Source of the DNA: Podarcis muralis
Lineage: Eukaryota
Assembly: GCF_964188315.1 (NCBI RefSeq)
Contig: NC_135670.1
Location: 1,240,001-1,304,000, forward strand
Reading direction: 5' to 3'
Length of the DNA: 64,000 nucleotides
Position numbers and translations under genes: made by a program. How positions within the stretch are numbered: the stretch's first letter is position 1; the number at the start of each line of letters is the position of its first letter. The notes under the pieces are model-generated. The model was given only the letters and a program-made list of their open reading frames with translations. It was not told where the DNA came from and did not search any database. Of this stretch, positions 5,287-59,000 are shown piece after piece.

Positions 5287-5949
5287 TACAGTTATCTCTG
5301 TGATGTGTAACCTAAATGATTCCTCACTCTATGCTTGCTCCTAAGTTCCCACTGCGCAGTTCAAAACAAATCATTGTTTCAGATTAACATATAAGCAACG
5401 GAGGCTTCTAGGATTTTATTAGGAAGACTTTGCAGGTCAGTTTTATAATAAAAGTAAAGAAGCTGAGGGCCAAAACCTGAGGGCGATATCGCTGATTCGG
5501 TTCATATTTGCAACTACTCAGAGGACACTGGTGGCTTTATATGAAAGACAGGGTAAATATTTCTATTTCTTTTCTTTTCTGGGGTGACCTCCTTCACTGA
5601 GTCCTTTCATGTTTTGAGATTAGCAACCCGATTTGTACCAATGCAAAATCACGAATGAAGTGTGCAATATTGGCCCATCAAGGAACAATGAACTGGGAGT
5701 CAATTCAACCACTGGTCCTGTTAGCTAGGGATCATGGGAGTTGTTGGCGAAAAACATCTGGAGGCCTGAGTTTGAGGAAGCCTGATTTAAGTTTATGAAA
5801 TAAACAAACAAACAAATAATAAATCTTAATTTCACAGGTACAGTAGTTATGGCTGGATATCATCATGGCAGATCCAAATACTTACTAGATGGACAAGTAA
5901 CTAAACAAGTGAGAAAAGTCAAACTATATTTTTATATTAGTTTATAAAC

Positions 5950-6085
5950 CAGGCTTCCTCAACCTCAGCCCTCCAGATATTTTGAGACTACAATTCCCAT
6001 CATCCCTGACCACTGGTCCTGCTAGCTAGGGATCATGGGAGTTGTAGGCCAAAAACATCTGGAGGGCTGAGGTTGAGGAAGCCTG
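5950..6085. mobile_element. hAT-type palindromic MITE (136 bp)
   Basis: TIR caggcttcctcaacctc / gaggttgaggaagcctg; 8-bp TSD ttataaac/ttgtaaac. A half copy lies at about 5709-5785. Confidence 0.8.
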
Positions 6086-6278
6086 TTGTAAACTCTCTGT
6101 CCCTCTCCATAAACCAGTCCTTTCTCTCTCTCAGGAGCCAATCGGAGCACACTGGGCTTCTCTCTCTCTCTCTCTCTCTCTTGATTGACCAAAGTCAATC
6201 CCATGATTGACCGGTCGATTGTGATTGACACGTTGGACATACCTGATTTAGGAGACTAGGCTAGTTCCACCAGTGACC

Positions 6279-6377
6279 CAGGGGTCAGCAAACTTTTTCA
6301 ACAGGGGACTGGTCCACTGTTCCTCAGACCTTGTGGTGGGCCGGACTATATTTTTTTTGGGGGGGGGGGGAATGAAC
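6279..6377. mobile_element. truncated hAT (Charlie-like) MITE end
   Basis: caggggtcagcaaac terminus shared with elements at 14780-15033 and 56402-57331. Confidence 0.65.
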
Positions 6378-6399
6378 TGCTCCTAGTCTTGTTAAGCTT

Positions 6400-9300
6400 T
6401 TTTTAAAAAAAATATTTTTTATTAACAGACCAATCAAATCACATAAATTCCAAATTACAAAGCCGAATTTTAAATTTTTTGTTGGGGGTACCCATATTTC
6501 AAGTTCCAAAAGGGATCCAATCCTCTTGTTGCTGCTGCTTTAATGTCCACAAATCTGTCCAAATAATGTTCACAATTCTATCCAATCCTTTTTTGCTGTT
6601 TTCCACATCTCATCTTGTTATTTTCATATATTTTTCCTTTCTCTTTGTCTTTGTGACCTCTGACAGTCTCCACAAGTGGGTTGAAACAAATTTGTAATCC
6701 TGTGTGGGTTTTTCCGTTCGTCCAAGGGTCGTATTCAGACGGCTACCGTATTTCATCGCTTCCATAAAGAAAAACACTCTTGCCGTCTACTAGTTAAATT
6801 TTCCCAGGTCTGTCACTCCCTTTCTCAGTCCTCTGAGGAGGTTCTGCCAGGATGGCGACTCCCTTTTTATTGCTGGGTCATCAAAAACCCTTGTTCTTTT
6901 CTCAATCTCCATAAACCAAGCTTTTGGTAATAAATCAATTCCACACAGTTTTTAATCATCCTGCTTAGGTCAGTTATGCGACGGTTCTTTCTTGGGGAGG
7001 GGTTATTGGTTAATCACATAGAAGAAAAGAAAAAAAAGCCCCCCCCATCCAGTCCCGCTCCGACATACTGAACCTTTGATGTATCTTCTTTGATGGATCT
7101 TCTTCATGATTGTTGTTGTTTAGTCGTTTAGTCGTGTCCGACTCTTCGTGACCCCATGGACCAGAGCACGCCAGGCACTCCTGTCTTCCACTGCCTCCCG
7201 CAGTTTGGTCAGGCTCATGTTTGTAGCTTCGAGAACACTATCCAACCATCTCATCCTCTGTCGTCCCCTTCTCCTAGTGCCCTCCATCTTTCCCAACATC
7301 AGGGTCTTTTCCAGGGAGTCTTCTCTTCTCATGAGGTGGCCAAAGTATTGGAGCCTCAACTTCACGATCTGTCCTTCCAGTGAGCACTCAGGTCTGATTT
7401 CCTTAAGAATGGATGTGTTTGATCTTCTTGCAGTCCATGGGACTCTCAAGAGTCTCCTCCAGCACCAGAATTCAAAAGCATCAATTCTTCGGCGATCAGC
7501 CTTCTTTATGGTCCAGCTCTCACTTCCATACATCACTACTGGGAAAACCATGGCTTTAACTATACGGACCTTTGTTGGTAAGGTGATGTCTCTACTTTTT
7601 AAGATGTTGTCTAGATTTGCCATCGCCTTTCTCCCAAGGAGCAGGCGTCTTTTAATTTCGTGACTGCTGTCACCATCTGCAGTGATCATGGAGCCCAAGA
7701 AAATAAAATCTCTCACTGCCTCCATTTCTTCCCCTTCTATTTGCCAGGAGGTGATGGGACCAGTGGCCATGATCTTCGTTTTTTTGATGTTGAGCTTCAG
7801 ACCATATTTTGCGCTCTCCTCTTTCACCCTCATTAAAAGGTTCTTTAATTCCTCCTCACTTTCTGCCATCAAGGTTGTGTCATCTGCATATCTGAGGTTG
7901 TTGATATTTCTTCCGGCGATCTTAATTCCGGCTTGGGATTCATCCAGCCCAGCCTTTCGCATGATGAATTCTGCATATAAGTTAAATAAGCAGGGGGACA
8001 ATATACAGCCTTGTCGTACTCCTTTCCCAATTTTGAACCAATCAGTTGTTCCATATCCAGTTCTAACTGTAGCTTCTTGTCCCACATAGAGATTTCTCAG
8101 GAGACAGATGAGGTGATCAGGCACTCCCATTTCTTTAGGAACTTGCCATAGTTTGCTGTGGTCGACACAGTCAAAGGCTTTTGCATAGTCAATGAAGCAG
8201 AAGTAGATGTCTTTCTGGAACTCTCTAGCTTTCTCCATAATCCAGCGCATGTTTGCAATTTGGTCTCTGGTTCCTCTGCCTCTTCTAAATCCAGCTTGCA
8301 CTTCTGGGAGTTCTCGGTCCACATACTGCTTGAGCCTTCCTTGTAGAATTTTAAGCATAACCTTGCTAGCGTGTGAAATGAGTGCAATTGTGCCGGTAGT
8401 TGGAGCATTCTTTAGCACTGCCTTTCTTTGGGATTGGGATGTAGACTGATCTTCTCCAATCCTCTGGCCACTGCTGAGTTTTCCAAATTTGCTGGCATAT
8501 TGAATGTAGCACCTTAACAGCATCATCTTTTAAAATTTTAAATAATTCAGCTGGAATATCATCACTTCCACTGGCCTTGTTATTAGCGATGCTTTCTAAG
8601 GCCCATTTGACTTCACTTTCCAGGATGTCTGGCTCAAGGTCAGCAACCACACTACCTGGGGTATACGAGACATCAATTTCTTTCTGGTATAGTTCCTCTG
8701 TGTATTCTTGCCACCTCTTCTTGATGTCTTCTGCTTCTGTTAGGTCCTTTCCACTTTTGTCTTTTATTATGGAAATCTTTGTACAAAATGTTCCTTTCAT
8801 ATCTCCAATTTTCTTGAACAGATCTCTGGTTTTTCCCATTCTATTGTTTTCCTCTATTTCTTTGCATTGCTCGTTTAAGAAGGCCTTCTTGTCTCTCCTT
8901 GCTATTTTTTGGAAATCTGCATTCAATTTCCTGTATCTTTCACTATCTCCCTCGCATTTTGCTTGCCTTCTCTCCCCCGCTATTTGTAACGCCTCGTTGG
9001 ACAGCCACTTTGCTTTCTTGCATTTCCTTTTCATTGGGATGGTTTTAGTTGCTGCCTCTTGTATAATGTTACGAGCCTCCATCCATAGTTCTTCAGGCAC
9101 TCTGTCCACCAAATCTAAATCCTTAAACCTGTTCCTCACTTCCACTGTGTATTCATAAGGGATTTGACTTAGATTGTATCTTACCGGCCCAGTGGTTTTT
9201 CCTACTTTCTTCAGTTTAAGCTTGAATTTTGCTATAAGAAGTTGATGATCTGAGCCACAGTCAGCTCCAGGTCTTGTTTTTGCTGACTGTATAGAGCTTC

Positions 9301-10721
9301 TCCATCTTTGGCTGCAGAGAATATAATCAATCTGATTTTGATGCTGCCCATCTGGTGATGTCCATGTGTAGAGTCGTCTCTTGTGTTGTTGGAAAAGAGT
9401 GTTTGTGATGACCAGCTTGTTCTCTTGACAGAACTCTATTAGCCTTTGCCCTGCTTCGTTTTGAACTCCAAGGCCAAACTTGCCAGTTGTTCCTTTTATC
9501 TCTTGACTCCCTACTTTAGCATTCCAATCCCCTATTATGAGCAGAACATCCTTCTTTGGTGTCACTTCTATAAGGTCTTGTAAGTCTTCATAGAATTGGT
9601 CGATTTCAGTTTCTTCAGCACCAGTAGTTGGTGCATAAACTTGGATTACTGTGATGTTAAAAGGTCTGCCTTGGATTCGTATCGAGATCATTCTATCATT
9701 TTTGAGATTGCATCCCAGTACAGCTTTCACCACTCTTTTGTTGACTATGAGGGCCACTCCATTTCTTTTACGGGTTTCTTGCCCACAGTAGTAGATATGA
9801 TAGTCATCCGAACTGAATTCGCCCATTCCCGTCCATTTTAGTTCACTGATGCCCAGGATGTCAATATTTATTCTTGCCATCTCATTTTTGACCACCTCCA
9901 ACTTACCCAGGTTCATGGTTCTTACATTCCAGGTTCCTATGCAATATTTTTCTTTACAGCATTGGACTTTCCTTTCACTTCCATGCATATCCGCAACTGA
10001 GCGTCCTTTCGGCTTTGGCCCAGCCACTTCATCAGCTCTGGATCTACTTGTACTTGTCCTCCGCTCTTCCCCAGTAGCATGTTGGACACCTTCCGACCTG
10101 AGGGGCTCATCTTCCAGCGTCATAACTTTTATATGCCTGTTGTCTTTGTCCATGGAGTTTTCTTGGCAGGGATACTGGAGTGGCTTGCCAGTTCCTGCTC
10201 CAGGTGGATCACGTTTGGTCAAAACTCTCCACTATGACCTGTCCATCTTGGGTGGTCCTGCACGGCATAGCTCATAGCTTCTCTGAGTTATTCAAGCCCC
10301 TTCGCCACGGCAAGGCAGTGATCCATGAAGGAGCTTCTTCATGATATAATCCGCTAAATCCAACCCGTCGCTCTACTTTCCCAGAGGTCACTTCAATTAG
10401 CAGTCTTCCCTCCCGTTCTTCACTTGAAATGCGTGCATTTGCTTCTTTTCTAATTGTTTATTTCAAGCTGCTGCAGCCAGTGCACGATCAGAGACAGTGT
10501 CCGGGAGAGCCGGACCCACCCAAGGGCTTTGTGCCTAGTGCCCTCACCCCCTTCTTTCGAATCCGGGGGTGATTTGTGGCCACAGCAGGCAAGGCAGTGT
10601 TCCCCATGTCCTTGGGGCAACAAAGAGGCTGCATACTCCCATATCAGCCTCTTAATTACCTCGTGTGAGCCGGAGAGATGGTATTGTTGGCCATCTTCCA
10701 ATGTGCCCCTGGTGGCCCCCC
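6400..10721 (-). mobile_element. non-autonomous L1-like poly(A) retroelement (about 1.1 kb once BovB is removed)
   Basis: 16-bp TSD tagtcttgttaagctt at 6384-6399 and 10759-10774; AATAAA + A-rich tail at 6400-6423 on minus; 5' end GGGGGG...GGAAGATGGCC (YY1-like motif typical of L1 5' ends); no clear ORF. Confidence 0.6.
7111..10333 (-). mobile_element. full-length BovB (RTE-clade) LINE, ORF broken by one +1 frameshift near 8393
   Basis: AP-endonuclease ORF 8366-10222 (IGTWNVRTMN, GDWNAKVG, CGSDH) + RT ORF 7120-8526 (GVRQGCILSP, RYADD); (AAC)n tail; 12-bp TSD cttcttcatgat at 7099-7110 and 10334-10345. Confidence 0.96.
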
Positions 10722-10726
10722 TAGTC

Positions 10727-10762
10727 TCGGTTCTCGGCCTTTTGGCTAAGATCAAGTGTAGT
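10727..10762 (+). pseudogene. U2 snRNA 5' fragment retrocopy (U2 nt 2-37)
   Basis: TCGGTTCTCGGCCTTTTGGCTAAGATCAAGTGTAGT matches vertebrate U2 nt 2-37 at 35/36 (U2 sequence recalled: ATCGCTTCTCGGCCTTTTGGCTAAGATCAAGTGTAGTA). Confidence 0.85.
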
Positions 10763-12888
10763 CTTGTTAAGCTTGAGTCCAGGGAATGGAAAGCCCACTG
10801 TGAACTGTTGGCTTATTAAAGCTCCGGGTGTATGGACAGGTGGGTACAAGGTGTGGCCAAAACATCCATACAGGAAGGTGTAGCAGGAGAGGACCTCTTG
10901 AAGATAATTTATTATCACCAGTTGTAATAGTGTGGTGATACCTGCCCTTTGGAGTTTGCTGCCATTAAATATTAGACAGGCACCATATCTACTGTCTTTT
11001 GGGTCCTTAACTACAGACCTTCCTCTTCCAATTAGCTTTTTAAGTGGATATCCTTATTCCAGTCTGTATCTGTACCTGTAAACGTTATTTAACTGCTTTA
11101 ATTGTTTTTGTGTATGGAACTATTTTAAAAAAAAACCAACAACAACCAACAACACAAGAAACTGTAATTGTTTTTGTACATTTTTATTGCTTTTTGGTTG
11201 CCATTGTTTTGTTTTACTTATTAATAAAATACCTTGCAGTAAGGGGAAGTTAACAAATCAGTCAGTCAATAAGTCTGCATTCATAATCGCTGGGCTGCTT
11301 TAGTTTGTTCTCCTACATTGGTCTTACTTTTTGATGATGATGATGATGCAATTCTTGGGCTTCCCCAAGATGGCTGATACATCCCTCTTGTATATGGGTG
11401 GTTTTTTTTAGATTTTCTGGAAACAGATAACCTCCTTAAATTTTGATAGATCAGTTTTCTAATCTGGGTGATAGGAAATTCATATTGAGTACTCTAGTAG
11501 TGTGAATTCAACCAACCATTGATACTAAAAAGTGAAGTGAGAAAAATAGGAACTCAGAACATTCTTGCTCATTTAATGTGTTATTGTTGTACTGTTTAGC
11601 CAAAAGGAAGATATAGCAGTTTTCCATTTTTTTAAAGCAAAATACCTTAGGCCACCCCTGCGCTTATTTTATGGGGTCATGCATGAAAAGCATTATGGGT
11701 TTTGACTGAATAGAATTGCTGTGAATGGTTCATGTATGTATTTATCTGATTTTATTTATATTCAAGATCTTCTCTATTTTGGTACCAATATATTGCAACT
11801 TGGAATGCAATCCTATGGCTTCTGGGAAGGTGACTTGGGGTCATAGGATGCAATGGACTTCAGAGCTGAAGAACGCTCCAGCCATTCTAGCATCATTCAT
11901 GGTCCTGGTCCTATTGATGATGGAAGTCTGGCATCAATAGAGCCCAAAATAAGTAATACTGAAGGCTTGTGAAGGAGCTGAAAAGAACTTCTGAGCAAAT
12001 GGTCCAATCCTGCAGGGTGCTGCTTTGTAAGAACCTTCACTGGGTGGAGGCTACTTGCAAAGGAGCTCCTGGCATAATTGTATCAGCCACTCTTCAGTTT
12101 GTGAGCAGGAGATTCCTGCTGGGGCGTGTTTCCCCTGGGTCTTTCCTGAGAGGGAACATCCTGGTACTGCCTGCCTCTGCTTCCTGCCTGATGCCCCACC
12201 TCTGACAGTTCCAGATCACTCCAGGAGGTGGTTGTTCACCAAACAGTGTTGATCTGGGGTGGTCTCCAATTGACTTAGTCAAAGCCAGATTCCACACAAA
12301 TTGGCATGGTTTAGTTTGTGGTTCAGGCTGTGGCTGAATCCTGTGCACAGCCCCAGCAGTTTGTACCTTGTGCAAAATACTACACAATTTCAACACCAGG
12401 CTATTTCAACCTGCCACATCTTTTCTGGTATTTTATCTTGCATCTTTCCCCCCAGCATTGTTTATGGCCCACTACAAACTTTTGTGTCTCTTGCTATTCC
12501 ACTGCAGTGAATCGGTGGCACTTTCTACAGACATGTGGTCAACATATTGTTTCCTGCTACGTTGCCTCCAGTGCCTGACTCTTCACCTGCAGTTATCTTC
12601 TCTGTAATTATTCCAAATGAACCATAATTGATTTGACTTCTTACTCGTGTCCCAGAGGGGTCCTGGTAGAATGGTGATCAAGACAGAAGGATGTCATTAG
12701 CACATCCAGATCTATTCAAAGTTGAGACTTGATTCTAGACACAACACAATATAAATCTGATGACTGTCAGTTCATCTCAGTTCTAATCATGCAAAATCAC
12801 ACTGAATGTTTGGTCATTCAAGTTAACCTGTTTTGTACTCAAGGACATTTGGGGGATAATGTGGAACAGGTGAAGATTTCAAGAAATA

Positions 12889-13121: not shown

Positions 13122-16100
13122 GTAAGAAGCTGAGAATGTTCACCATGCCATACTTCTGCCTGACTAATATTTCCAGGTGGTGTAGACTGATGTTTGCTTC
13201 AATAGGGTTGGGTTATTTATTGATATATTTTTATATGTCAGGATAATAAATTGCTTAATGAAATAAAGCTCTACGCAGTGAACATAAATTAACACAAAAC
13301 ACTCATAAATAATATACAAAACCTCAGCAATTTTAAAAATAAATAAAAAGTATGAATAACTAAATTATATTGCATAGGTAAAGGTAAAGGTAAAGGGACC
13401 CCTGACCTTTAGGTCCAGTCGCGGACGACTCTGGGGTTGAGGCGCTCATCTCGCTTTATTGAATTCTTCCCTTTCAGAAGATCACCCCCCTTCTGACTGA
13501 AATGAGATCCAAGTAGAATGTGTCTTCACACCACTACTTCTCCCTTCCCCAATTCAGCTTCCAAGTTTTCTCTTGCCTGAAACACTTAAAATACACCCAT
13601 CACTGTCTTTTGATCTAAGCTCAGAGGCTTAACACCAAGAGCATGACTCTCAACTCTCCCTTTTCCCTCCCCAATTGCTGACTCCAGCTAGCGTTAATCT
13701 GCAGTCATTCAGGAAGAGACTCCAGTCCCCTTTTGGAATCCCACTGCACTGCATCACCAGACTCTGGTCCAGCTGAGCTTTCCATCACAACATATTGAAC
13801 AGAAATGTAGCAAATATCTCTTGCAGTTGCTGCACTCTTGATGGCACAGGTTACTCTAATTGCAGATTACTGGCGCAGAATTACCAGCACATCTTGGCCC
13901 TGGTATTTGCAGTGAAGGAGATCGACAACAACTCCAAAATCCTACCCAATATCACTCTTGGTTTTGACGTATATAACAATTATTTCCATCCACTGATCAC
14001 ATGCCAGGCAACGTTGAAAGTTCTCTCCACACACAATCAATTCATCCCTAATTACAAATGTGATGTTCAGAACCATCTGGTAGCAGTCATTGGGGGACCC
14101 AGTTCCAACATAGTTGGGCACATTGCAGCCATACTGGGCACCTACAAGATTCCACAGGTAAATTTTGTTCATAGGAATTATTTATAAGATGAAGGTTTTG
14201 CATTCAGAAGCAGAAAGTAATCTGACTGAAATTAAAGGTAACACCATGCATGCTGCTTAATGTTTGGATATGATTTCTTTCTCCTATTTATAGTCTCTGA
14301 TATGAAATGGCAAAACCATCCCTGAACGCTATGGTGAACAGCCTACATTTTGCTGGACTTCAAAATCTGCCAGCAATTTAAAAAATGGGACAATACAATA
14401 GATTGGGCTTCCTCAGCCAGCAGCAAAATAAGGTTGTACACCATTACAGTTTAGTCAAAGAAGACCCATTGTAAACAGTTCACATGACAAATCTAGGTCC
14501 AGTGCTTTCAATTGTTCTCCTTCGGGGAAAGTGTAACTGCAAAGAACCTTAGTTGCTTATTTGCAAAAGAAAAGTCTGGACACTAGCTTTGGTGTGGGCA
14601 TTGAGAGAAGAAAATCCAGCTGCTAAAACCCAGACAGACTGATGTTTGTGTGCAGTTCCCCTGCAAGGAAGTTGAAGAGCTGAAGTTTGCAACATCTGCT
14701 TTATCAGCCAGTTCTCTCAGAACATCAACTGAATCATCTCAAAAAGACAGACTAGAAAACCAGTTTGTGGCTATTAGAGCAGGGGTAGGCAAACTAAGGC
14801 CCGGGGGCCAGATCCGGCCCAATCGCCTTCTAAATCTGGCCCACAAACGGTCCAGGAATCAGCGTGTTTTTACATGAGTAGAATGTGTCCTTTTATTTAA
14901 AATGTATCTCTGGGTTATTTGTGGGGCATAGGAATTCGTTCATTATTATTTTTCTTCAAAATATAGTCCAGCCCCCCACAAGGTCTGAGGGACAGTGGAC
15001 CGGCCCCCTGCTGAAAAAGTTTGCTGACCTCTGTATTAGAGCTTTCCTTTATCATTTGGATGCTGTTTGATCCTGCCTCGTGGTTTCTTCTTCAGTCCTA
15101 ATTTGCTCTCCAGTTTTGGCTTCATTCCTCAACTTTTATTCCAAAGTAGAAGTTTGGGGTTCATATTTCAAACCCTACTCACTTGAAAAGACATGCATTG
15201 TTTCTAGCCTTCCTGTCAATTGATAGACTTTTCTACTCACAGGTCCAGATACTAGTGGTGGCTTAGGAATCCTTCTAATTCACGAATACTCTGTATGGTA
15301 TGCAATTTTATGCTTTAGAATAAGCATCAGGCTCTTATATGCTACATGCATTAAAGGTTCATAGTTCAGTCATAGAGCATCTGCCTTGCATATCGAAGGT
15401 CACAGGTTAAATCCAGCATCTCCTACCTACTCCTGTTTTGCTTTCTTTTATTTAGTTCACCTACGCATCCGCTCCAGAGATGAATAACAGAACTGAAAAC
15501 AATTTCTACCACTGGATGTTCCCAAATGAGGCTCATCAATATGTTGGAATGATTCAGTTACTGTTGCATTTCAGGTGGACATGGGTTGGGATGATTTACC
15601 ACAATGTGGACAGTTCCACGATATTTGTACAGAATATGCTCCCCATCCTAACTCAGAATGGCATTTGCTTTGAGTTCATCAAAAACTTACCAGATGTAGG
15701 TTTTTCTAATCAACTCTCTGAAATGATGAAGAAGGCATTTGGGGTTATAAATGTTGCCATGGAAAGTACAGTCAATACAGTGATCTTTCATGGTGGCTTT
15801 CAGGCAATGATGAATTTAAGAATTCTGTTCCAACTCTTGCAATTTGAAGATGTTCCAGTGAAGTCAAAGATCTGGATCTTAACAGCAGATGTGGATTTCA
15901 CATCTTCTCCAGTTCAAAGAGACTGGGACCTTCATTTTATCCATGGCTCTGTATCCCTTGCTGTCTCCTCAAAGGAGGTGGCAGGATTCCGTGAATTCCT
16001 GCAAATGAGGAACCCAACACTAGAAAAAGAGGATGGTTTTCTGAGGGACTTCTGGCAACAGGTGTTTGCTTGCTCACTCCCTAGCTCCAGGGAAGCAGAG

Positions 16101-47700: not shown

Positions 47701-50700
47701 GGACATAAGCTTTGTAAATTTGGGTGATGTATATATGCAGTTGGGATGCCAGGAATAGAACAGTGAGTCGAACAAGAAAGAAAGTANNNNNNNNNNNNNN
47801 NNNNNNNNNNNNNNNNNNNNNNNNNNNNNNNNNNNNNNNNNNNNNNNNNNNNNNNNNNNNNNNNNNNNNNNNNNNNNNNNNNNNNNNNNNNNNNNNNNNN
47901 NNNNNNNNNNNNNNNNNNNNAAGGTCAGCTAGTGTGCTGATTTATAGGAAATTATGTCATACGGATTGGCCAGTAACGGTTGATTGATTGAATACTGTGT
48001 TAAGGTGATAAAAAAAAGCGTTTTCCATTTCAAACAATGCAGATCATGGATTATGTTTCTAAAGCCTTAAGAAAGAAAGTCAATCCCTGTACAGGCAATG
48101 ACTTTCTAACTGGCATTGGCAAATCTTTCTAATTGGCATTTATGGATATTATGTTTAGAGAGGAAATGCTTATCTCCACTGTAGCACTCAGTTCTTCCCA
48201 TACTAGTACTGGTTGCTTTGTAACTTTATTCTACTGATTCAATTAACATTAGCAAATGTGATTTTTGTAAACCTTTGCATGAAATCAAAACACAAACCTC
48301 CCTCGGCAAACAGGGTAAGAATGTTTTGGACAAATCTCTCACCAGCAAATGTCTATACACTTAACTTACTTGTGGCATCTTGTACATGGACAGGACAGCT
48401 GACATGTAGAGACATAAGTCGGAGTTTGGTCCCCCAACGGCTGCTACTGGAGTGCTCTCACCATCACACTTGTAGTTGGGGGTGAGTCTGCCCCGTCCAG
48501 AGAGGAGTTCCACTGAGGCATGATAAGTCCATCCTGCGGTGAAATGGCTGTTATATATGTGGCAGCCCAGTGTGACATTGGGTAAGATATAGGGGTTTTC
48601 ATTGATCTCCTCTACAGCAAATACAAAGGCCATAATGTGCTGGTAGAGTTGTGTCACTGACCTGGAAATGAGATTCATATATAAAAATGCACAGAACTAA
48701 ATTAAACCAGAGGTGAATGAAATTGATGGCAGCTTTTGACAACAAAGAACTGGCAAGAGTGAGAGATGAAACTATGGCAAAGCTACAAGGAGCAACTGAT
48801 GAGCTGGAAGAACTCACTTGATGAATTGGGAGAATACAGGCATATGGAGAAATGAAGCAACTCAGTGATAGAGCTGGGATTCTGGGAAACATAAACGAGG
48901 TTATAAATGGAGACATGGAGAGATTTCTGGACATCTATGGAATGGAGAGAGAAAGAGCTCTCCCTACGACTTGGAGTGATTAAATCCCTGGCATGCTTTG
49001 TGGGGGGAAACAAAACCAGAAGAAATGTAAATGTAAATGGGATCAGGCTGGAAAAACATAGCAAATACTACAAGAAGTGGAAATTGAAGGTAAAGAACTG
49101 AGTGTGGAGCAATATATATTGAATATTGTCTTAATGTATGTTCACAGATGTGATACTCTTATACATACAGAGAGGGAAAGATTTATCGTTATTTAATATG
49201 GAGGTATGCTTGCTGAAATTGGTGGAGGCAAAGCTGGTATGTTTAGCTACTGAAAAACTATTGCTAACTTTTAGCAATATTATAAATTGGGAACCGTTTC
49301 TGGACTTGTTTGAAATTGAAGGTGAACACACAATAACTGGATTTCAAGATTGGAAAAATACTGGTTTATGGGTACTGGAATACTTGAATGTTGTGGAGTG
49401 AATGTTCTGAATCATTCTTTTTATGTAACTGACAGACAGAATCTGAAGCCCTTTTATTTTATTTTTTCCTGTTTTTCTTTCTTTTCTTTTCTCCTTTCTT
49501 TTTCTATAAAGATATCTAGCTGTCTCAAAAAGATCAAAGGCTTCAGGGTATAAGAAAGGAGATTCTGACTAAACATCAGGAAGAGATTCCTGATGGTAAA
49601 AACTCTTCAACAGGGTAACCGACTCCCTTGGAAGGTTGTGGACTCACCTACATTGGTAGTTTTTAAGCAGAATTTGGATGGCCATCTGTCATGGATGCTT
49701 TAGTTGAGATTCCTGCGTTGCAGGGAGTTGGACTAGATGACCCCTGGGGGTCCCTTCCAACTCAACAATTTTATGATTCTATTAATATATGCACCCAGTG
49801 TAGGAGAATGTTTGGTAACATTGGCAGACAAATATGGATGTGTTGTTCCCATGAGCAGGAGGACATATGCATTCACATCACTCAACTATACATAGCAATA
49901 CTTTAGTTACTACTGAACTCTGGAAAACTCAAAAAATAGAATGTGCTTTTCTTATATTAATTGCAATTTATTTTGAGTTAAATCCTGAGATATTTTGTAA
50001 TTAAGGTTGTGCATTTGGAAATTTCACATATTCATCACACATTTACATGTGTCTCAGAGTCATGCTTCCCACAGCAATGTGCATGTATTTTTCTAGGGCA
50101 GAAACTTAATATACCATTGTTGTTGCTACTAATATTATTACTTTTGTTACTACAAGTCCTAATCCCATTACTGTTGCTGTTGCTGCTGCTTGTACAAATG
50201 ATAAGAGCAGGGGGAAGATTTTTAAAATGAGTTGAGGACATCGTAGTTCTCATTATTCTAAGGATAACCTAAAACTCACTATTTGAAAGTGATGAACCAT
50301 TCCTTTCAGCATAGGTGACCGATAAACAATAAATGAATCCAAAACTAAAAATGGGAAATATGGCGGGGGGGGGGGGAGTCTCTACACAAATAATGTGGAA
50401 AGTACTAAAAGCTGTTGATTTTGAAACAGAAATAGTTTAAAAGAGCTACTCACAGTTGTGTGTTTGCTCACTACGAACAGACACTGTTTATAGTTACCAA
50501 TATTGATTGAGCAAATTTACCCTCAACCATAAACACTGGAACTGTTAAAAGGGAAAAAATGGTGCATAATGATGAAATAATATAGTTAAAGCTATAGTTT
50601 TCCCTGTAGTGATGTATGGAAGTGAAGGCTGATTGCCGAAGAATTGATGCTTCTGAATTCTGGTGCTGGAGGAGACTCTTGAGAGTCCCATGGACTGCAA

Positions 50701-56080: not shown

Positions 56081-59000
56081 GTGATCTGTATACAGCGCAG
56101 TCATATGGGTTGAGGTTTCTCATAAAGTAGAGGAATGCACAGGAAAGGGAAGTTGATGGAGAGGCGGGCAGGGAGTGGAACCGGTCATGTTGTGCCAGGG
56201 AGGAGTGCGGAGAAAAGCCCACACAGCTCTTTGGGTGCCAGAGGTCCACTAAGCCCCATAGAAACCCCAGGGGTGAGCCCACTCTTTGCTGCTGGCTGTT
56301 GTGTTCCTTTAGTGTGTGCAGTCAGGAATGGCTGTACAATTAGGCAGAATGAGGCAGTTGCCTCAAGTAGTAGGTGTTGGGGTGGGTAGAGATGTGTAGA
56401 CCAGGGGGCAGCAAACTTTTTTGGCAGGGGGCCGGTCCACTGTCCCTCAGACCTTGTGGGGGGTCTTGAATTATTATTTTTTTTAAAAAAAATGAACGAA
56501 TATTTTGAAAAATAATAGTGAACGAATTCCGATGCACACTGCATAGAATTAATCCGTTCCAGACTTTTAAAAACAAACCCTAAAACAATTTAACACGTTT
56601 TTGCAATTTAACATGAATTTTCCTATCTAACGAGACCATTGAGCCGTAAAATGAAAGCAATAAACAATGTACTGTACTGCAAAATAAATAAGGCAGTATT
56701 GTAGATGATAAAAATTAAAATTACGGTAATTTTTTTTCCTTATCTGCACTGATGATAGTCATTGTTTGGATGGGGGGGGGGGTCCTCACCTGGGTTTGGT
56801 GCATAGCTGTCAACTTTTCCCTTTTCTTGCGAGGAATCCTATTCAGAATAAGGGAATTTCCCTTTAAAAAGGGGAAAGTTGACAGCTATGGTCTGGTGCT
56901 GCGTTGTGACCTGCTGGGCCTCCTGCTGCCGGCACCTCTTCCGCGCTTCGGGGGTGGGATGGGGGCCCCCCTGCTGGCAGTGGAGGCCAAATCGCCACTG
57001 CACCGGCGGCAGGACTGTGGGAAGGTCTTTGGAGGCCCTCCCACCTTTCGCAGCCCTCCCACCGGCAGGGATTATCTTGGCGCTGCGTTTCATTGGTAGA
57101 GCTGCTGCAGCATCAGCTCTACCAATGAAACACAGTGCTGGGATGAGGGATGACCCTGTCACTGCGTTGGCTCTACCAGTGAAACACAATGCTGGGGTCA
57201 GCCCTCAGCCCTCATCCCGGCGCTGCGTTTCACCCTCAGACTCTCGGAGGGTCCTTAAATGGCCATGTGGCCAAGATTTACAACCCTGTCTGGCCTGACT
57301 CGGCCCGCGGACCATTGTTTGCTGACCCCTGGTGTAGACCACACAAGCTGCACTGCACCTCCTCAGCTAGTCTGCTGCCCCATCAGCAGCATAGAAATAG
57401 GAGCCAATGGCCAGCCCAGCTCAGCTTGTGTATGTGGAATTGTGTGTATGGAGGGAGCATCTTGTCATTTGCCTGGGGGGGCAGAAAGTAGTATCAAAGG
57501 CTACTGTCTTCTGATCCAGACATTGGTCAGAAAAGTTTCCTCAAGCAGCGAGGCATCTCGGCTTGCTTCTTCCACCTGCTTATCCTCCCAAGTGCCCACT
57601 CCTTGAACAGTTGAGTGTCCCTGGCTGATGGCTGCCACAGCACATGGAAACCCTTTTCCCTGGGGTGGGAATGGTATGTTGACTATTGATGGCTAAAGTA
57701 AAAATTTTCTTTCTTCAAGCATCAGCTTTTCACGAGTTGGTTACTTACTTCAAATCTCCAACGGGTGAAAGATTTTTCATACTTGAGATTTTCATCATTG
57801 CTGCCTTGACACTGCTGATTTATATGCTATGTAAGTACATAATTGGCGTATGCTGATACTACTGTCGTGGGCTTTGCTTCAATGCCAATAGCATTTCCAA
57901 AAAGAGATGGCAGGATCCACCTTCCCTTTACCCCTTTCATCTCTCTTTGATTTCCAGGGGTGAGTTACAGCTGCCACCCAGTGAGAGCAATGGCACTGTT
58001 TTGTTCTCCCTGAAAAAGTGAGTTCCAGCACTTGGAAGAGAGACATAGGCTAACACAAGTCCCTGGGACACCCTGGACAATTCCCTTTCCCGGTTTGCAA
58101 TTTTCTCCTCCTTTCCCAACTAATCCTCATTTGCCGTGGGAGAGCCCCCATTCCTGGTTTCGCCACGCTGCCCTGTAGCGTTCCCAAAGCAAGGAAGGAT
58201 TGGACTCTGATTAATAAAATACACACGAGGCTTGACCAGCAAGACTCTGGGAGGAGTGTGTATAATAATAATAATTCTCCACCCCTCGGCCCAGGTCGTT
58301 TTTACACAGTGTTGGTAAGAACCAATCAGATTTCCTCTGAGCATTTCAAAACCCCCATGTGGGGACAAAGTTAAAAGTTAACTACAAAGAGCTAATTTGA
58401 ACATGTATAGTAATCCAGAGTAAATTATTGCACTTGGGCAAAAAAAAAAAAAAAAAAAGAAAAAAGAAAAAAAAAAGAGAGGCACAAATACAAGATGGGT
58501 GACACCTGGCTTGAGAGCAGTACATGTGAAAAGGATCTAGGAGTCTTGGTTGACCACAAACTTGACATGAGCCAACAGTGTGACGCGGCAGCTAAAAAAG
58601 CCAATGCAATTCTGGGCTGCATCAATAGGAGTATAGCATCTAGATCAAGGGAAGTAATAGTGCCCCTGTATTCTGCTCTGGTCAGACCTCACCTGGAGTA
58701 CTGTGTCCAGTTCTGGGCACCACAGTTCAAGAAGGACACTGACAAACTGGAACGTGTCCAGAGGAGGGCAACCAAAATGGTCAAAGGCCTGGAAACGATG
58801 CCTTATGAGGAACGGCTAAGGGAGCTGGGCATGTTTAGCCTGGAGAAGAGGAGGTTAAGGGGTGATATGATAGCCATGTTCAAATATATAAAAGGATGTC
58901 ATATAGAGGAGGGAGAAAGGTTGTTTTCTGCTGCTCCAGAGAAGCAGACACGGAGCAATGGATCCAAACTACAAGAAAGAAGATTCCACCTAAACATGAG

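What the first reader, a model, noticed from the sequence alone, without database searches (positions are those of the whole stretch)
10716..10774. Inverted U2 snRNA fragment captured at the 5' junction of an L1-like insertion: twin priming on a second RNA
Seen (plus): L1 5' end ...ggtggcccccc | tagtc | U2 nt 2-37 | rest of TSD cttgttaagctt. The U2 piece is antisense to the element. Its last four bases (TAGT, U2 34-37) are the first four bases of the 16-bp TSD, and a partial TSD copy (tagtc) lies between U2 and the L1 end. Established: L1 twin priming makes inversions; 3'-truncated U2 retropseudogenes tend to end near nt 33-37; the known U6/L1 chimeras are same-sense. Inference: the second-nick 3' overhang (...ACTA-3') annealed to U2 UAGU and was reverse transcribed while the first nick primed on the poly(A), so two different RNAs were co-integrated in opposite orientations in one event. 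An independent U2 insertion would have to start exactly at the L1 5' end.
Basis: partly seen in the sequence, partly recalled or inferred. Interest (0 to 1): 0.8.

Follow-up and report, generated by a model that had tools for sequence, protein, structure and literature searches.

The report
Inverted U2 fragment at retrocopy junction
A 36-base piece of the U2 splicing RNA sits head-to-head with a 1.1-kb retrocopy inside one pair of target-site duplications in a lizard-type genome, most likely because a second reverse transcription started on U2 during the same insertion; this kind of chimera was already described in the human genome in 2015.

Summary
U2 snRNA nt 2-37 (35 of 36 bases match, + strand, 10727-10762) lies between the 5' end of a minus-strand, A-tailed 1,087-nt retrocopy and the right copy of a perfect 16-bp TSD (6384-6399 and 10759-10774). 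The last four U2 bases, TAGT, are also the first four TSD bases. An extra TAGTC (10722-10726) separates U2 from the retrocopy.

The geometry is what priming of the second-nick 3' overhang (...GACTA-3') on U2 UAGU (nt 34-37) predicts. I rate this one-event twin priming on a second RNA the best explanation (about 0.7).

It is not new. Doucet et al. 2015 (PMC4476161) list seven inverted, 3'-truncated snRNA/retroelement chimeras in human, including a U2/L1, and propose this model. Law & Burns 2026 (PMC13174262) extend it to 5S rRNA and tRNA halves.

The main rival is a separate U2 insertion, for which TAGTC...TAGTC would be its own 5-bp TSD.

"L1-like" and "1.1-kb family" are unverified. The host has no ORF, no Pfam match and no second copy in the window. 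Neither an empty site nor other copies could be retrieved.

First readers noted a similar head-to-head U2/L1 chimera elsewhere in this genome (s1-188887, unchecked).

The parts
6384..6399 (.). Left copy of the 16-bp target-site duplication, TAGTCTTGTTAAGCTT
   Evidence: Exact, one of only two copies in the window. It is preceded by ...gaatgaactgctcc, with no U2 sequence.
6400..7109 (-). 3' part of the host retrocopy. On the minus strand it ends ...TTAATAAAAAATATTTTTTTTAAAAA. The last 11 nt (7099-7109) are one copy of the nested LINE's TSD.
   Evidence: AATAAA plus a short A tail abuts the left TSD. No ORF of 100 aa or more in any frame.
7110..10333 (-). Nested 3.2-kb RTE/BovB-like LINE, inserted later into the host retrocopy. 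It is not part of the U2 event.
   Evidence: It has an 11-bp TSD, CTTCTTCATGA, at 7099-7109 and 10334-10344. Minus-strand ORFs carry Exo_endo_phos (E 2.2e-16) and RVT_1 (E 2.5e-35). The BovB name rests on my recognition of the sequence.
10334..10721 (-). 5' part of the host retrocopy. On the minus strand it starts GGGGGGCCACCAGGGGCACATTGGAAGATGGCC... The interval 10334-10344 is the second copy of the nested LINE's TSD.
   Evidence: With the LINE and one copy of its TSD removed, the host is 1,087 nt and contiguous. It has no Pfam match.
10722..10726 (.). Pentamer TAGTC between the host 5' end and U2, identical to the first five bases of the TSD
   Evidence: The chance of a given 5-mer here is about 1/1024. 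It is either a templated filler or the left copy of a 5-bp TSD.
10727..10762 (+). U2 snRNA nt 2-37: stem-loop I plus the single-stranded stretch up to the branch-point recognition sequence. One mismatch, C5 to G.
   Evidence: Rfam RF00004, 35.9 bits, E 6.5e-6. The exact 31-mer is unique in the window.
10759..10774 (.). Right copy of the 16-bp TSD. Its first four bases (TAGT) coincide with U2 nt 34-37.

Best explanation
One retrotransposition event co-integrated two RNAs.

1. A LINE endonuclease/reverse transcriptase of the L1 type nicked the + strand after ...TTAAGCTT. It primed first-strand cDNA on the A tail of a 1.1-kb non-coding polyadenylated RNA.
2. The second nick, 16 nt away on the - strand, freed a 3' overhang ending ...AACAAGACTA-3'.
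3. This overhang did not prime second-strand synthesis on the first cDNA. Its last four bases paired with UAGU (nt 34-37) in the single-stranded branch-point recognition region of a U2 snRNA.
4. The overhang was extended by reverse transcriptase to U2 nt 2.
5. The two cDNAs were then joined 3' end to 3' end.

This leaves U2 nt 2-37 head-to-head with the retrocopy, antisense to it and inside one TSD pair.

The TAGTC between them is best read as a templated filler. The first cDNA may have copied the last five bases of the overhang in an aborted joining attempt before U2 was engaged. Alternatively, an end-joining polymerase copied them.

Shown: the anatomy, the orientation, the TSD, the 4-nt overlap and the filler. 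Inferred: the single event, the order of steps and the enzyme.
For: - U2 nt 2-37 is real and is the only such fragment in the window.
- The perfect 16-bp TSD encloses both the retrocopy and U2. The left TSD copy has no U2 next to it, so U2 was not in the target before insertion.
- The retrocopy is minus-strand with AATAAA and an A5 tail at the left TSD. U2 is plus-strand with its 5' end facing the retrocopy's 5' end.
- The complement of the TSD ends ...ACTA-3', which pairs with U2 34-37. So the U2/TSD boundary is exactly where extension of that overhang would put it.
- The priming site lies in the stretch that the Rfam consensus structure marks unpaired after stem-loop I.
- The same architecture and model are published for seven human snRNA chimeras. 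They have 1-4 nt junction homology, truncation in single-stranded segments and a non-L1-like cleavage site in the snRNA orientation. Antisense 5S rRNA and tRNA-half chimeras follow the same model.
- Read in the U2 orientation, the priming site is GACTA/GG. Published independent tailless snRNA copies use TTTT/A-like sites, so this site is unlike theirs.
- Rough odds, by inference. A separate insertion would need its nick at the one bond between the retrocopy and its TSD, roughly 3e-4 per U2 fragment in a window with a few dozen retroelement junctions. That outweighs the roughly 24:1 excess of independent over twin-type copies seen in human (166 versus 7).
Against: - The extra TAGTC is not predicted by plain twin priming. 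It makes U2 nt 2-33 flanked by a 5-bp direct repeat, as a separate insertion would.
- No empty site, no allele with the retrocopy but without U2, and no other copy of the retrocopy could be retrieved. The single event is therefore not demonstrated.
- The first-nick site, AGCTT/GA, is only weakly L1-like.
- The partner has no L1 sequence features beyond its tail and TSD.
- Complementarity between the overhang and U2 beyond the terminal 4 nt is no better than chance.
Confidence: 0.7

Rival explanations
1. Two separate events. The 1.1-kb retrocopy inserted normally, giving the junction ...CCCCCC|TAGTCTTGTTAAGCTT. Later a tailless 3'-truncated U2 retropseudogene (nt 2-33/37) inserted by its own target-primed reverse transcription. 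Its nick was at GACTA/GGGG on the minus strand and it duplicated 5 bp (TAGTC).
For: - TAGTC flanks the U2 piece on both sides.
- Independent 3'-truncated snRNA copies primed by short complementarity in single-stranded segments are the commonest class in human: 166 of 256.
- First readers report a stand-alone U2 5' fragment ending at the branch-point recognition sequence elsewhere in this genome (s1-179035, unchecked).
Against: - The nick would have to fall on the single bond between the retrocopy's first base and its TSD, and in the antisense orientation. That is a coincidence of roughly 1 in several thousand (inference).
- The site GACTA/GG is unlike the TTTT/A sites of published tailless snRNA copies.
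- A 5-bp TSD is short for L1-type insertion.
Confidence: 0.15
2. The antisense U2 piece was already part of the source RNA. The source could be a master copy that was itself such a chimera. It could also be a transcript running antisense through a U2 gene or pseudogene. The insertion would then be an ordinary 5'-truncated retrocopy, joined at TAGT microhomology.
For: - 5' truncation at microhomology is usual for L1-type insertions (established knowledge).
- The true 5' end of the 1,087-nt RNA is unknown, because no other copy was found.
- U2 position 1 reads C and position 5 reads G, which could mark a degenerate source copy.
Against: - The internal TAGTC matching the first five bases of this site's TSD would be a 1/1024 coincidence.
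- The retrocopy begins with a G run and an AAGATGGCC box about 25 nt in. That looks like a transcript start rather than an internal point (the resemblance is from memory and is only a lead).
- I saw no convincing snRNA promoter elements upstream of the U2 piece (inspection against consensus recalled from memory, not a formal test).
Confidence: 0.08
3. Still one event, but without priming on the overhang. A free U2 partial cDNA or fragment was captured as filler by end joining when the 5' junction was sealed.
For: The templated-looking TAGTC filler resembles end-joining products (inference). Capture of unrelated cDNA at breaks is known (established knowledge).
Against: The U2 piece starts at the RNA's 5' end. 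It stops exactly where the overhang's ACTA-3' pairs with it. Extension from the overhang predicts both features; random capture does not.
Confidence: 0.05

Closest known systems
Inverted 3'-truncated snRNA/L1 (or SVA) chimeras formed by twin priming on the snRNA. Doucet et al. 2015, Mol Biol Evol 32:1815 (PMC4476161), Fig. 1B and Suppl. Table 1. The list includes 'U2_3'trunc-L1' with L1 1457 nt, TSD 14, truncation at nt 55 and a 2-nt junction.
   Same: - The snRNA starts at its 5' end and is 3'-truncated in a single-stranded segment.
- It is antisense to the retroelement, and both lie inside one TSD.
- There is a short homology (here 4 nt) between the truncation point and the TSD.
- The cleavage site is not L1-like when read in the snRNA orientation.
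   Different: - The host genome is a squamate-type genome, not human.
- The partner is a non-coding 1.1-kb A-tailed retrocopy rather than a recognisable L1.
- U2 is truncated at nt 37 rather than 55.
- A 5-nt copy of the TSD start sits at the snRNA/retrocopy junction.
Antisense 5S rRNA (nt 1-45) and tRNA-half (nt 1-37) LINE-1 chimeras. Law & Burns 2026, Cell Genomics (PMC13174262).
   Same: A short 5' segment of an abundant structured small RNA lies antisense to the LINE-1 at its 5' end and within TSDs. The authors attribute this to twin priming.
   Different: The RNA species differs.
Classical L1 twin priming (Ostertag & Kazazian 2001, Genome Res 11:2059, as cited in PMC4476161)
   Same: The second-nick 3' overhang primes reverse transcription. 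The inverted segment abuts the 5' TSD.
   Different: Classically both cDNAs copy the same L1 RNA. Here the second template is a different RNA.
U6/L1 chimeras formed by template switching or RtcB ligation (Buzdin 2002/2003; Garcia-Perez 2007; Moldovan 2019, PMC6789731)
   Same: An snRNA and a retroelement lie inside one TSD.
   Different: In those chimeras U6 is full-length and in the same sense as L1. Here U2 is truncated and antisense, so those mechanisms do not fit.
Tailless 3'-truncated snRNA retropseudogenes (Doucet 2015 Group III; Denison & Weiner 1982)
   Same: A U2 5' fragment with no poly(A), primed internally by short complementarity.
   Different: Those stand alone with their own L1-like TTTT/A site and TSD. 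This one lies inside another element's TSD at its exact 5' end.

Membership tests
Twin-priming-type inverted snRNA/retroelement chimera (Doucet 2015) | The snRNA segment begins at or near its 5' end and is 3'-truncated | tested here: met
   U2 nt 2-37 of about 190
Twin-priming-type inverted snRNA/retroelement chimera (Doucet 2015) | [quoted passage not shown] | tested here: met
   U2 is sense on the + strand. The retrocopy's AATAAA and A tail are on the - strand at the far end.
Twin-priming-type inverted snRNA/retroelement chimera (Doucet 2015) | Both segments are enclosed by one pair of TSDs | tested here: met
   16/16 TSD at 6384-6399 and 10759-10774, with 0.04 expected by chance
Twin-priming-type inverted snRNA/retroelement chimera (Doucet 2015) | Short homology between the snRNA truncation point and the insertion site | tested here: met
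   4 nt (TAGT = U2 34-37 = TSD 1-4), against 1-4 nt in the published cases. Complementarity beyond 4 nt is not above chance.
Twin-priming-type inverted snRNA/retroelement chimera (Doucet 2015) | Truncation falls in a single-stranded segment of the snRNA | tested here: met
   The Rfam consensus structure line marks positions 27-46 unpaired
Twin-priming-type inverted snRNA/retroelement chimera (Doucet 2015) | The cleavage site is L1-EN-like in the retroelement orientation and not in the snRNA orientation | tested here: inconclusive
   Retrocopy orientation: AGCTT/GA, with two T before the nick and purines after, which is a weak match. U2 orientation: GACTA/GG, no match. The endonuclease preference of this genome's L1 is not known to me.
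Twin-priming-type inverted snRNA/retroelement chimera (Doucet 2015) | The partner is an L1 or an L1-mobilised RNA | tested here: inconclusive
   AATAAA, an A5 tail and a 16-bp TSD fit L1-type mobilisation. There is no L1 ORF, no Pfam match and no similarity to anything else in the window.
Twin-priming-type inverted snRNA/retroelement chimera (Doucet 2015) | Single event, shown by an empty orthologous site lacking both parts | not testable with these tools
   No eukaryotic genome DNA search is available. Protein look-ups by ORF and one metagenome scan found nothing.
Independent tailless 3'-truncated snRNA retropseudogene | Own TSD and own L1-like (TTTT/A) priming site | tested here: inconclusive
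   A 5-bp direct repeat (TAGTC) is present, but the priming site GACTA/GG is not T-rich (criterion).
U6/L1-type template-switch or ligation chimera | The snRNA is in the same sense as the retroelement, usually full-length | tested here: not met
   U2 is antisense and truncated.
Classical L1 twin priming | The inverted segment derives from the same element RNA | tested here: not met
   The inverted segment is U2, which is unrelated to the host sequence.

The most novel reading that the evidence does not exclude
The TAGTC filler may be a molecular record of the order of steps. The first cDNA would have begun copying the top-strand overhang, been displaced, and only then did U2 occupy the overhang. 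Three further U2 notes exist in the same genome: a head-to-head U2/L1 in one 18-bp TSD, a U2/Bov-B chimera and a fragment primed at the branch-point recognition sequence. All three are unchecked. Taken together, they could mean that U2's branch-point recognition sequence is an unusually frequent landing site for target-primed reverse transcription intermediates in squamates, and for more than one LINE clade.
Probability: 0.12. Interest if true: 0.45.

Novelty: new member of a known kind. Interest (0 to 1): 0.25.

Why it matters
It is a clean, young example with both TSD copies intact. It suggests that a second-strand overhang can be diverted onto an abundant nuclear RNA outside mammals, and with a partner that is not itself an L1. 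That modestly widens the taxonomic reach of a mechanism so far documented in human and other mammals.

The TSD-derived pentamer at the junction is a small unexplained detail. It could bear on how the two cDNAs are joined. The finding does not open a new question, because the class and the model are already in the literature.

Tried and rejected
- **Other copies in the window.** blastn with word size 9 and E below 1e-3 found only self matches for the host retrocopy. The 'family' could not be examined.
- **Paralogous empty site.** The left flank is a truncated copy of a repeat also present at 14958-15033 and 56401-56484. Similarity stops about 25 nt before the TSD, so it gives no paralogous empty site.
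- **Reaching this locus or relatives through ORFs.** Exact look-ups failed for the 121-aa and 101-aa ORFs spanning the junction and for the two ORFs of the nested LINE. A homology search with the 121-aa ORF also found nothing.
- **Metagenome scan.** A 26-mer from the host 5' end gave 0 hits.
- **Extended pairing.** I tested whether the 16-nt overhang pairs with the U2 single-stranded region beyond the terminal 4 nt. The duplex energy of -3.8 is no better than shuffled or random overhangs, so I rejected this.
- **U2 gene with its promoter.** I considered that 10345-10726 is a U2 gene promoter and the whole region a U2 gene copy. I saw no convincing PSE, octamer or SPH elements, though I judged that only against consensus recalled from memory. 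U2 positions 1 and 5 deviate. The sequence runs on, across the nested LINE, to a polyadenylated end at a TSD.
- **Template switching or RNA ligation, as for U6/L1.** Rejected on orientation.
- **U2 already in the target.** Rejected because the left TSD copy has no U2 beside it.
Full report
**Observation**

The 16-mer TAGTCTTGTTAAGCTT occurs exactly twice in the window, at 6384-6399 and 10759-10774. With up to two mismatches allowed, 0.04 matches are expected by chance.

Immediately left of the right copy, window 10727-10762 reads TCGGTTCTCGGCCTTTTGGCTAAGATCAAGTGTAGT. In a local scan Rfam aligns this to positions 1/2-37 of U2 snRNA at 35.9 bits, E 6.5e-6. That is below the family's gathering score of 46, as a 36-nt fragment must be. 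The 31-mer for U2 nt 7-37 is exact and is the only such sequence in the window, even allowing 3 mismatches. Against the vertebrate U2 5' end the only difference within nt 2-37 is C5 to G.

The last four U2 bases (TAGT) are also the first four TSD bases. Between U2 and the six-C run that ends the neighbouring element lies TAGTC (10722-10726), identical to the first five TSD bases.

**Anatomy of the neighbour**

The sequence between the TSDs, apart from U2, is a minus-strand element interrupted by a later insertion.

- *Nested LINE.* A 3,224-bp LINE occupies 7110-10333 on the minus strand. Its two ORFs carry an endonuclease domain (Exo_endo_phos, E 2.2e-16) and a reverse transcriptase domain (RVT_1, E 2.5e-35). 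It is bounded by its own 11-bp TSD, CTTCTTCATGA, at 7099-7109 and 10334-10344. I recognise it as RTE/BovB-like from the sequence.
- *Host element.* Removing the LINE and one copy of its TSD restores a contiguous 1,087-nt host sequence. On the minus strand it starts GGGGGGCCACCAGGGGCACATTGGAAGATGGCC... and ends ...TTAATAAAAAATATTTTTTTTAAAAA directly against the left TSD.
- *What the host is.* It has no ORF of 100 aa or more in any frame and no Pfam match for the ORFs at its 5' end. It has no similarity to anything else in the 64 kb.

The host therefore has the hallmarks of L1-type target-primed insertion: a polyadenylation signal, a short A tail and a 16-bp TSD. Nothing shows that it is an L1 or a member of a repeat family. 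It may equally be a retrocopy of a non-coding polyadenylated transcript.

**Geometry**

- The retrocopy's T-rich end is joined to the left TSD on the + strand. So the first nick was on the + strand after ...TTAAGCTT, and the first cDNA is + strand DNA.
- The staggered second nick on the - strand leaves a 3' overhang 5'-AAGCTTAACAAGACTA-3'.
- Its terminal ACTA-3' is complementary to U2 UAGU (nt 34-37).
- Extending it on U2 to the RNA's 5' end gives, on the + strand, U2 nt 2-33 followed by TAGTCTTGTTAAGCTT. This is what is seen.
- The left TSD copy is preceded by ...gaatgaactgctcc, not by U2. So U2 was not in the target beforehand.
- The pairing site lies in the stretch that the Rfam consensus structure shows as unpaired after stem-loop I. 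This region includes the branch-point recognition sequence (established knowledge).
- Pairing beyond the four terminal bases is no better than for shuffled or random overhangs.

**The pentamer and the rivals**

Plain twin priming does not predict the extra TAGTC. A chance match of five bases to the TSD start has probability of about 1/1024, so it needs an explanation. I see three readings.

1. *One event with a templated filler.* The first cDNA reaches the RNA's 5' end and copies the last five bases of the overhang (TAGTC) in an abortive joining attempt. The overhang then engages U2. At the U2 5' end the polymerase continues on the 3' end of the first cDNA, which now ends ...CCCCCCTAGTC. This reproduces the sequence exactly but is inference.
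2. *Two events.* TAGTC...TAGTC is the 5-bp TSD of a later, independent tailless U2 insertion primed at GACTA/GGGG.
   - That nick would have to hit the single bond between the retrocopy and its TSD, in one orientation. I estimate the chance at a few in ten thousand per U2 fragment.
   - The site is unlike the TTTT/A-type sites of published independent 3'-truncated snRNA copies.
   - In human, independent copies outnumber twin-type chimeras about 24 to 1 (166 versus 7). Even with that prior, the positional coincidence favours one event by more than an order of magnitude. This is a rough inference, not a computation on this genome.
3. *U2 was part of the source RNA.* This leaves the TAGTC match as a coincidence. 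It could not be tested because no other copy of the host was found.

**Comparison with what is known**

- Doucet et al. 2015 (PMC4476161) report seven human chimeras in which a 3'-truncated snRNA lies in the opposite orientation to the retroelement within one TSD: four U5 (with L1 or SVA), one U1, one U2 and one U6.
  - Junction homology is 1-4 nt in the rows I read.
  - For the U5 copies they note that truncation falls in one single-stranded loop. They also note that the cleavage site is L1-like only in the retroelement's orientation. They say the U1, U2 and U6 cases share these characteristics.
  - Their U2 case has a 1,457-nt L1, a 14-bp TSD, truncation at nt 55 and 2-nt homology.
- Law & Burns 2026 (PMC13174262) find that 5S rRNA (nt 1-45) and tRNA halves (nt 1-37) are predominantly antisense in LINE-1 chimeras. 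They invoke twin priming.

The present case meets every sequence-level criterion of this class that I could test. Two criteria remain inconclusive: the cleavage-site criterion (AGCTT/GA is only weakly L1-like) and the identity of the partner. The criterion that proves a single event, an empty orthologous site, is not testable with the tools at hand.

**What could not be done**

No tool here searches eukaryotic genome DNA.

- Exact look-ups of four ORFs from the locus found nothing.
- A homology search with the junction-spanning 121-aa ORF found nothing.
- A metagenome scan with a 26-mer from the host found nothing.
- The flanking repeat gives no paralogous empty site.

The scan's notebook lists, in the same genome, a 'head-to-head U2 snRNA / L1 chimeric retroinsertion inside one 18-bp TSD'. 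It also lists a U2/Bov-B chimera and a stand-alone U2 5' fragment primed at the branch-point recognition sequence. These are unchecked first-reader notes. I use them only as leads that the phenomenon may recur.

**Verdict**

The best explanation is co-integration of U2 nt 2-37 by priming of the second-nick overhang on U2 during insertion of a 1.1-kb A-tailed retrocopy (confidence about 0.7). The main rival is a sequential U2 insertion with a 5-bp TSD (about 0.15).

This is a new instance, in a squamate-type genome and with a non-L1 partner, of a kind of chimera and a mechanism already described. Interest is low to moderate. The TSD-derived pentamer is the only feature not covered by the published model.

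Noticed in passing
window 7110-10333 (minus strand): A nearly intact 3.2-kb RTE/BovB-like LINE is nested in the host retrocopy, with a perfect 11-bp TSD, CTTCTTCATGA. Its coding region is split into two overlapping ORFs (618 aa with the endonuclease domain, 468 aa with the reverse transcriptase domain), which suggests a frameshift in the 8366-8526 overlap. It looks like a young copy.
   Followed up: partly
window 5945-6090, with a partial copy at 5708-5790: A palindromic MITE-like element with two 63-nt arms that are 87% complementary and 20 nt apart. A 92%-identical half copy lies 300 bp upstream.
   Followed up: partly
window 6279-6358; also 14958-15033 (minus strand) and 56401-56484: A short interspersed repeat (...GGTCAGCAAACTTTTTCAGCAGGGGGCCGGTCCACTGTCCCTCAGACCTTGTGG...) is present three times in the window. 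The copy left of the TSD is truncated and followed by a T8 G11 run.
   Followed up: partly
window 10690-10698 (minus-strand sense GGAAGATGGCC, about 25 nt from the host 5' end): An AAGATGGCC box lies near the 5' end of the host retrocopy. It resembles the YY1 box near the start of human L1 and of many pol II transcripts. The resemblance is from memory and was not tested.
   Followed up: no
window 47787-47920: A run of 134 N (assembly gap or masked). I left it untouched.
   Followed up: no
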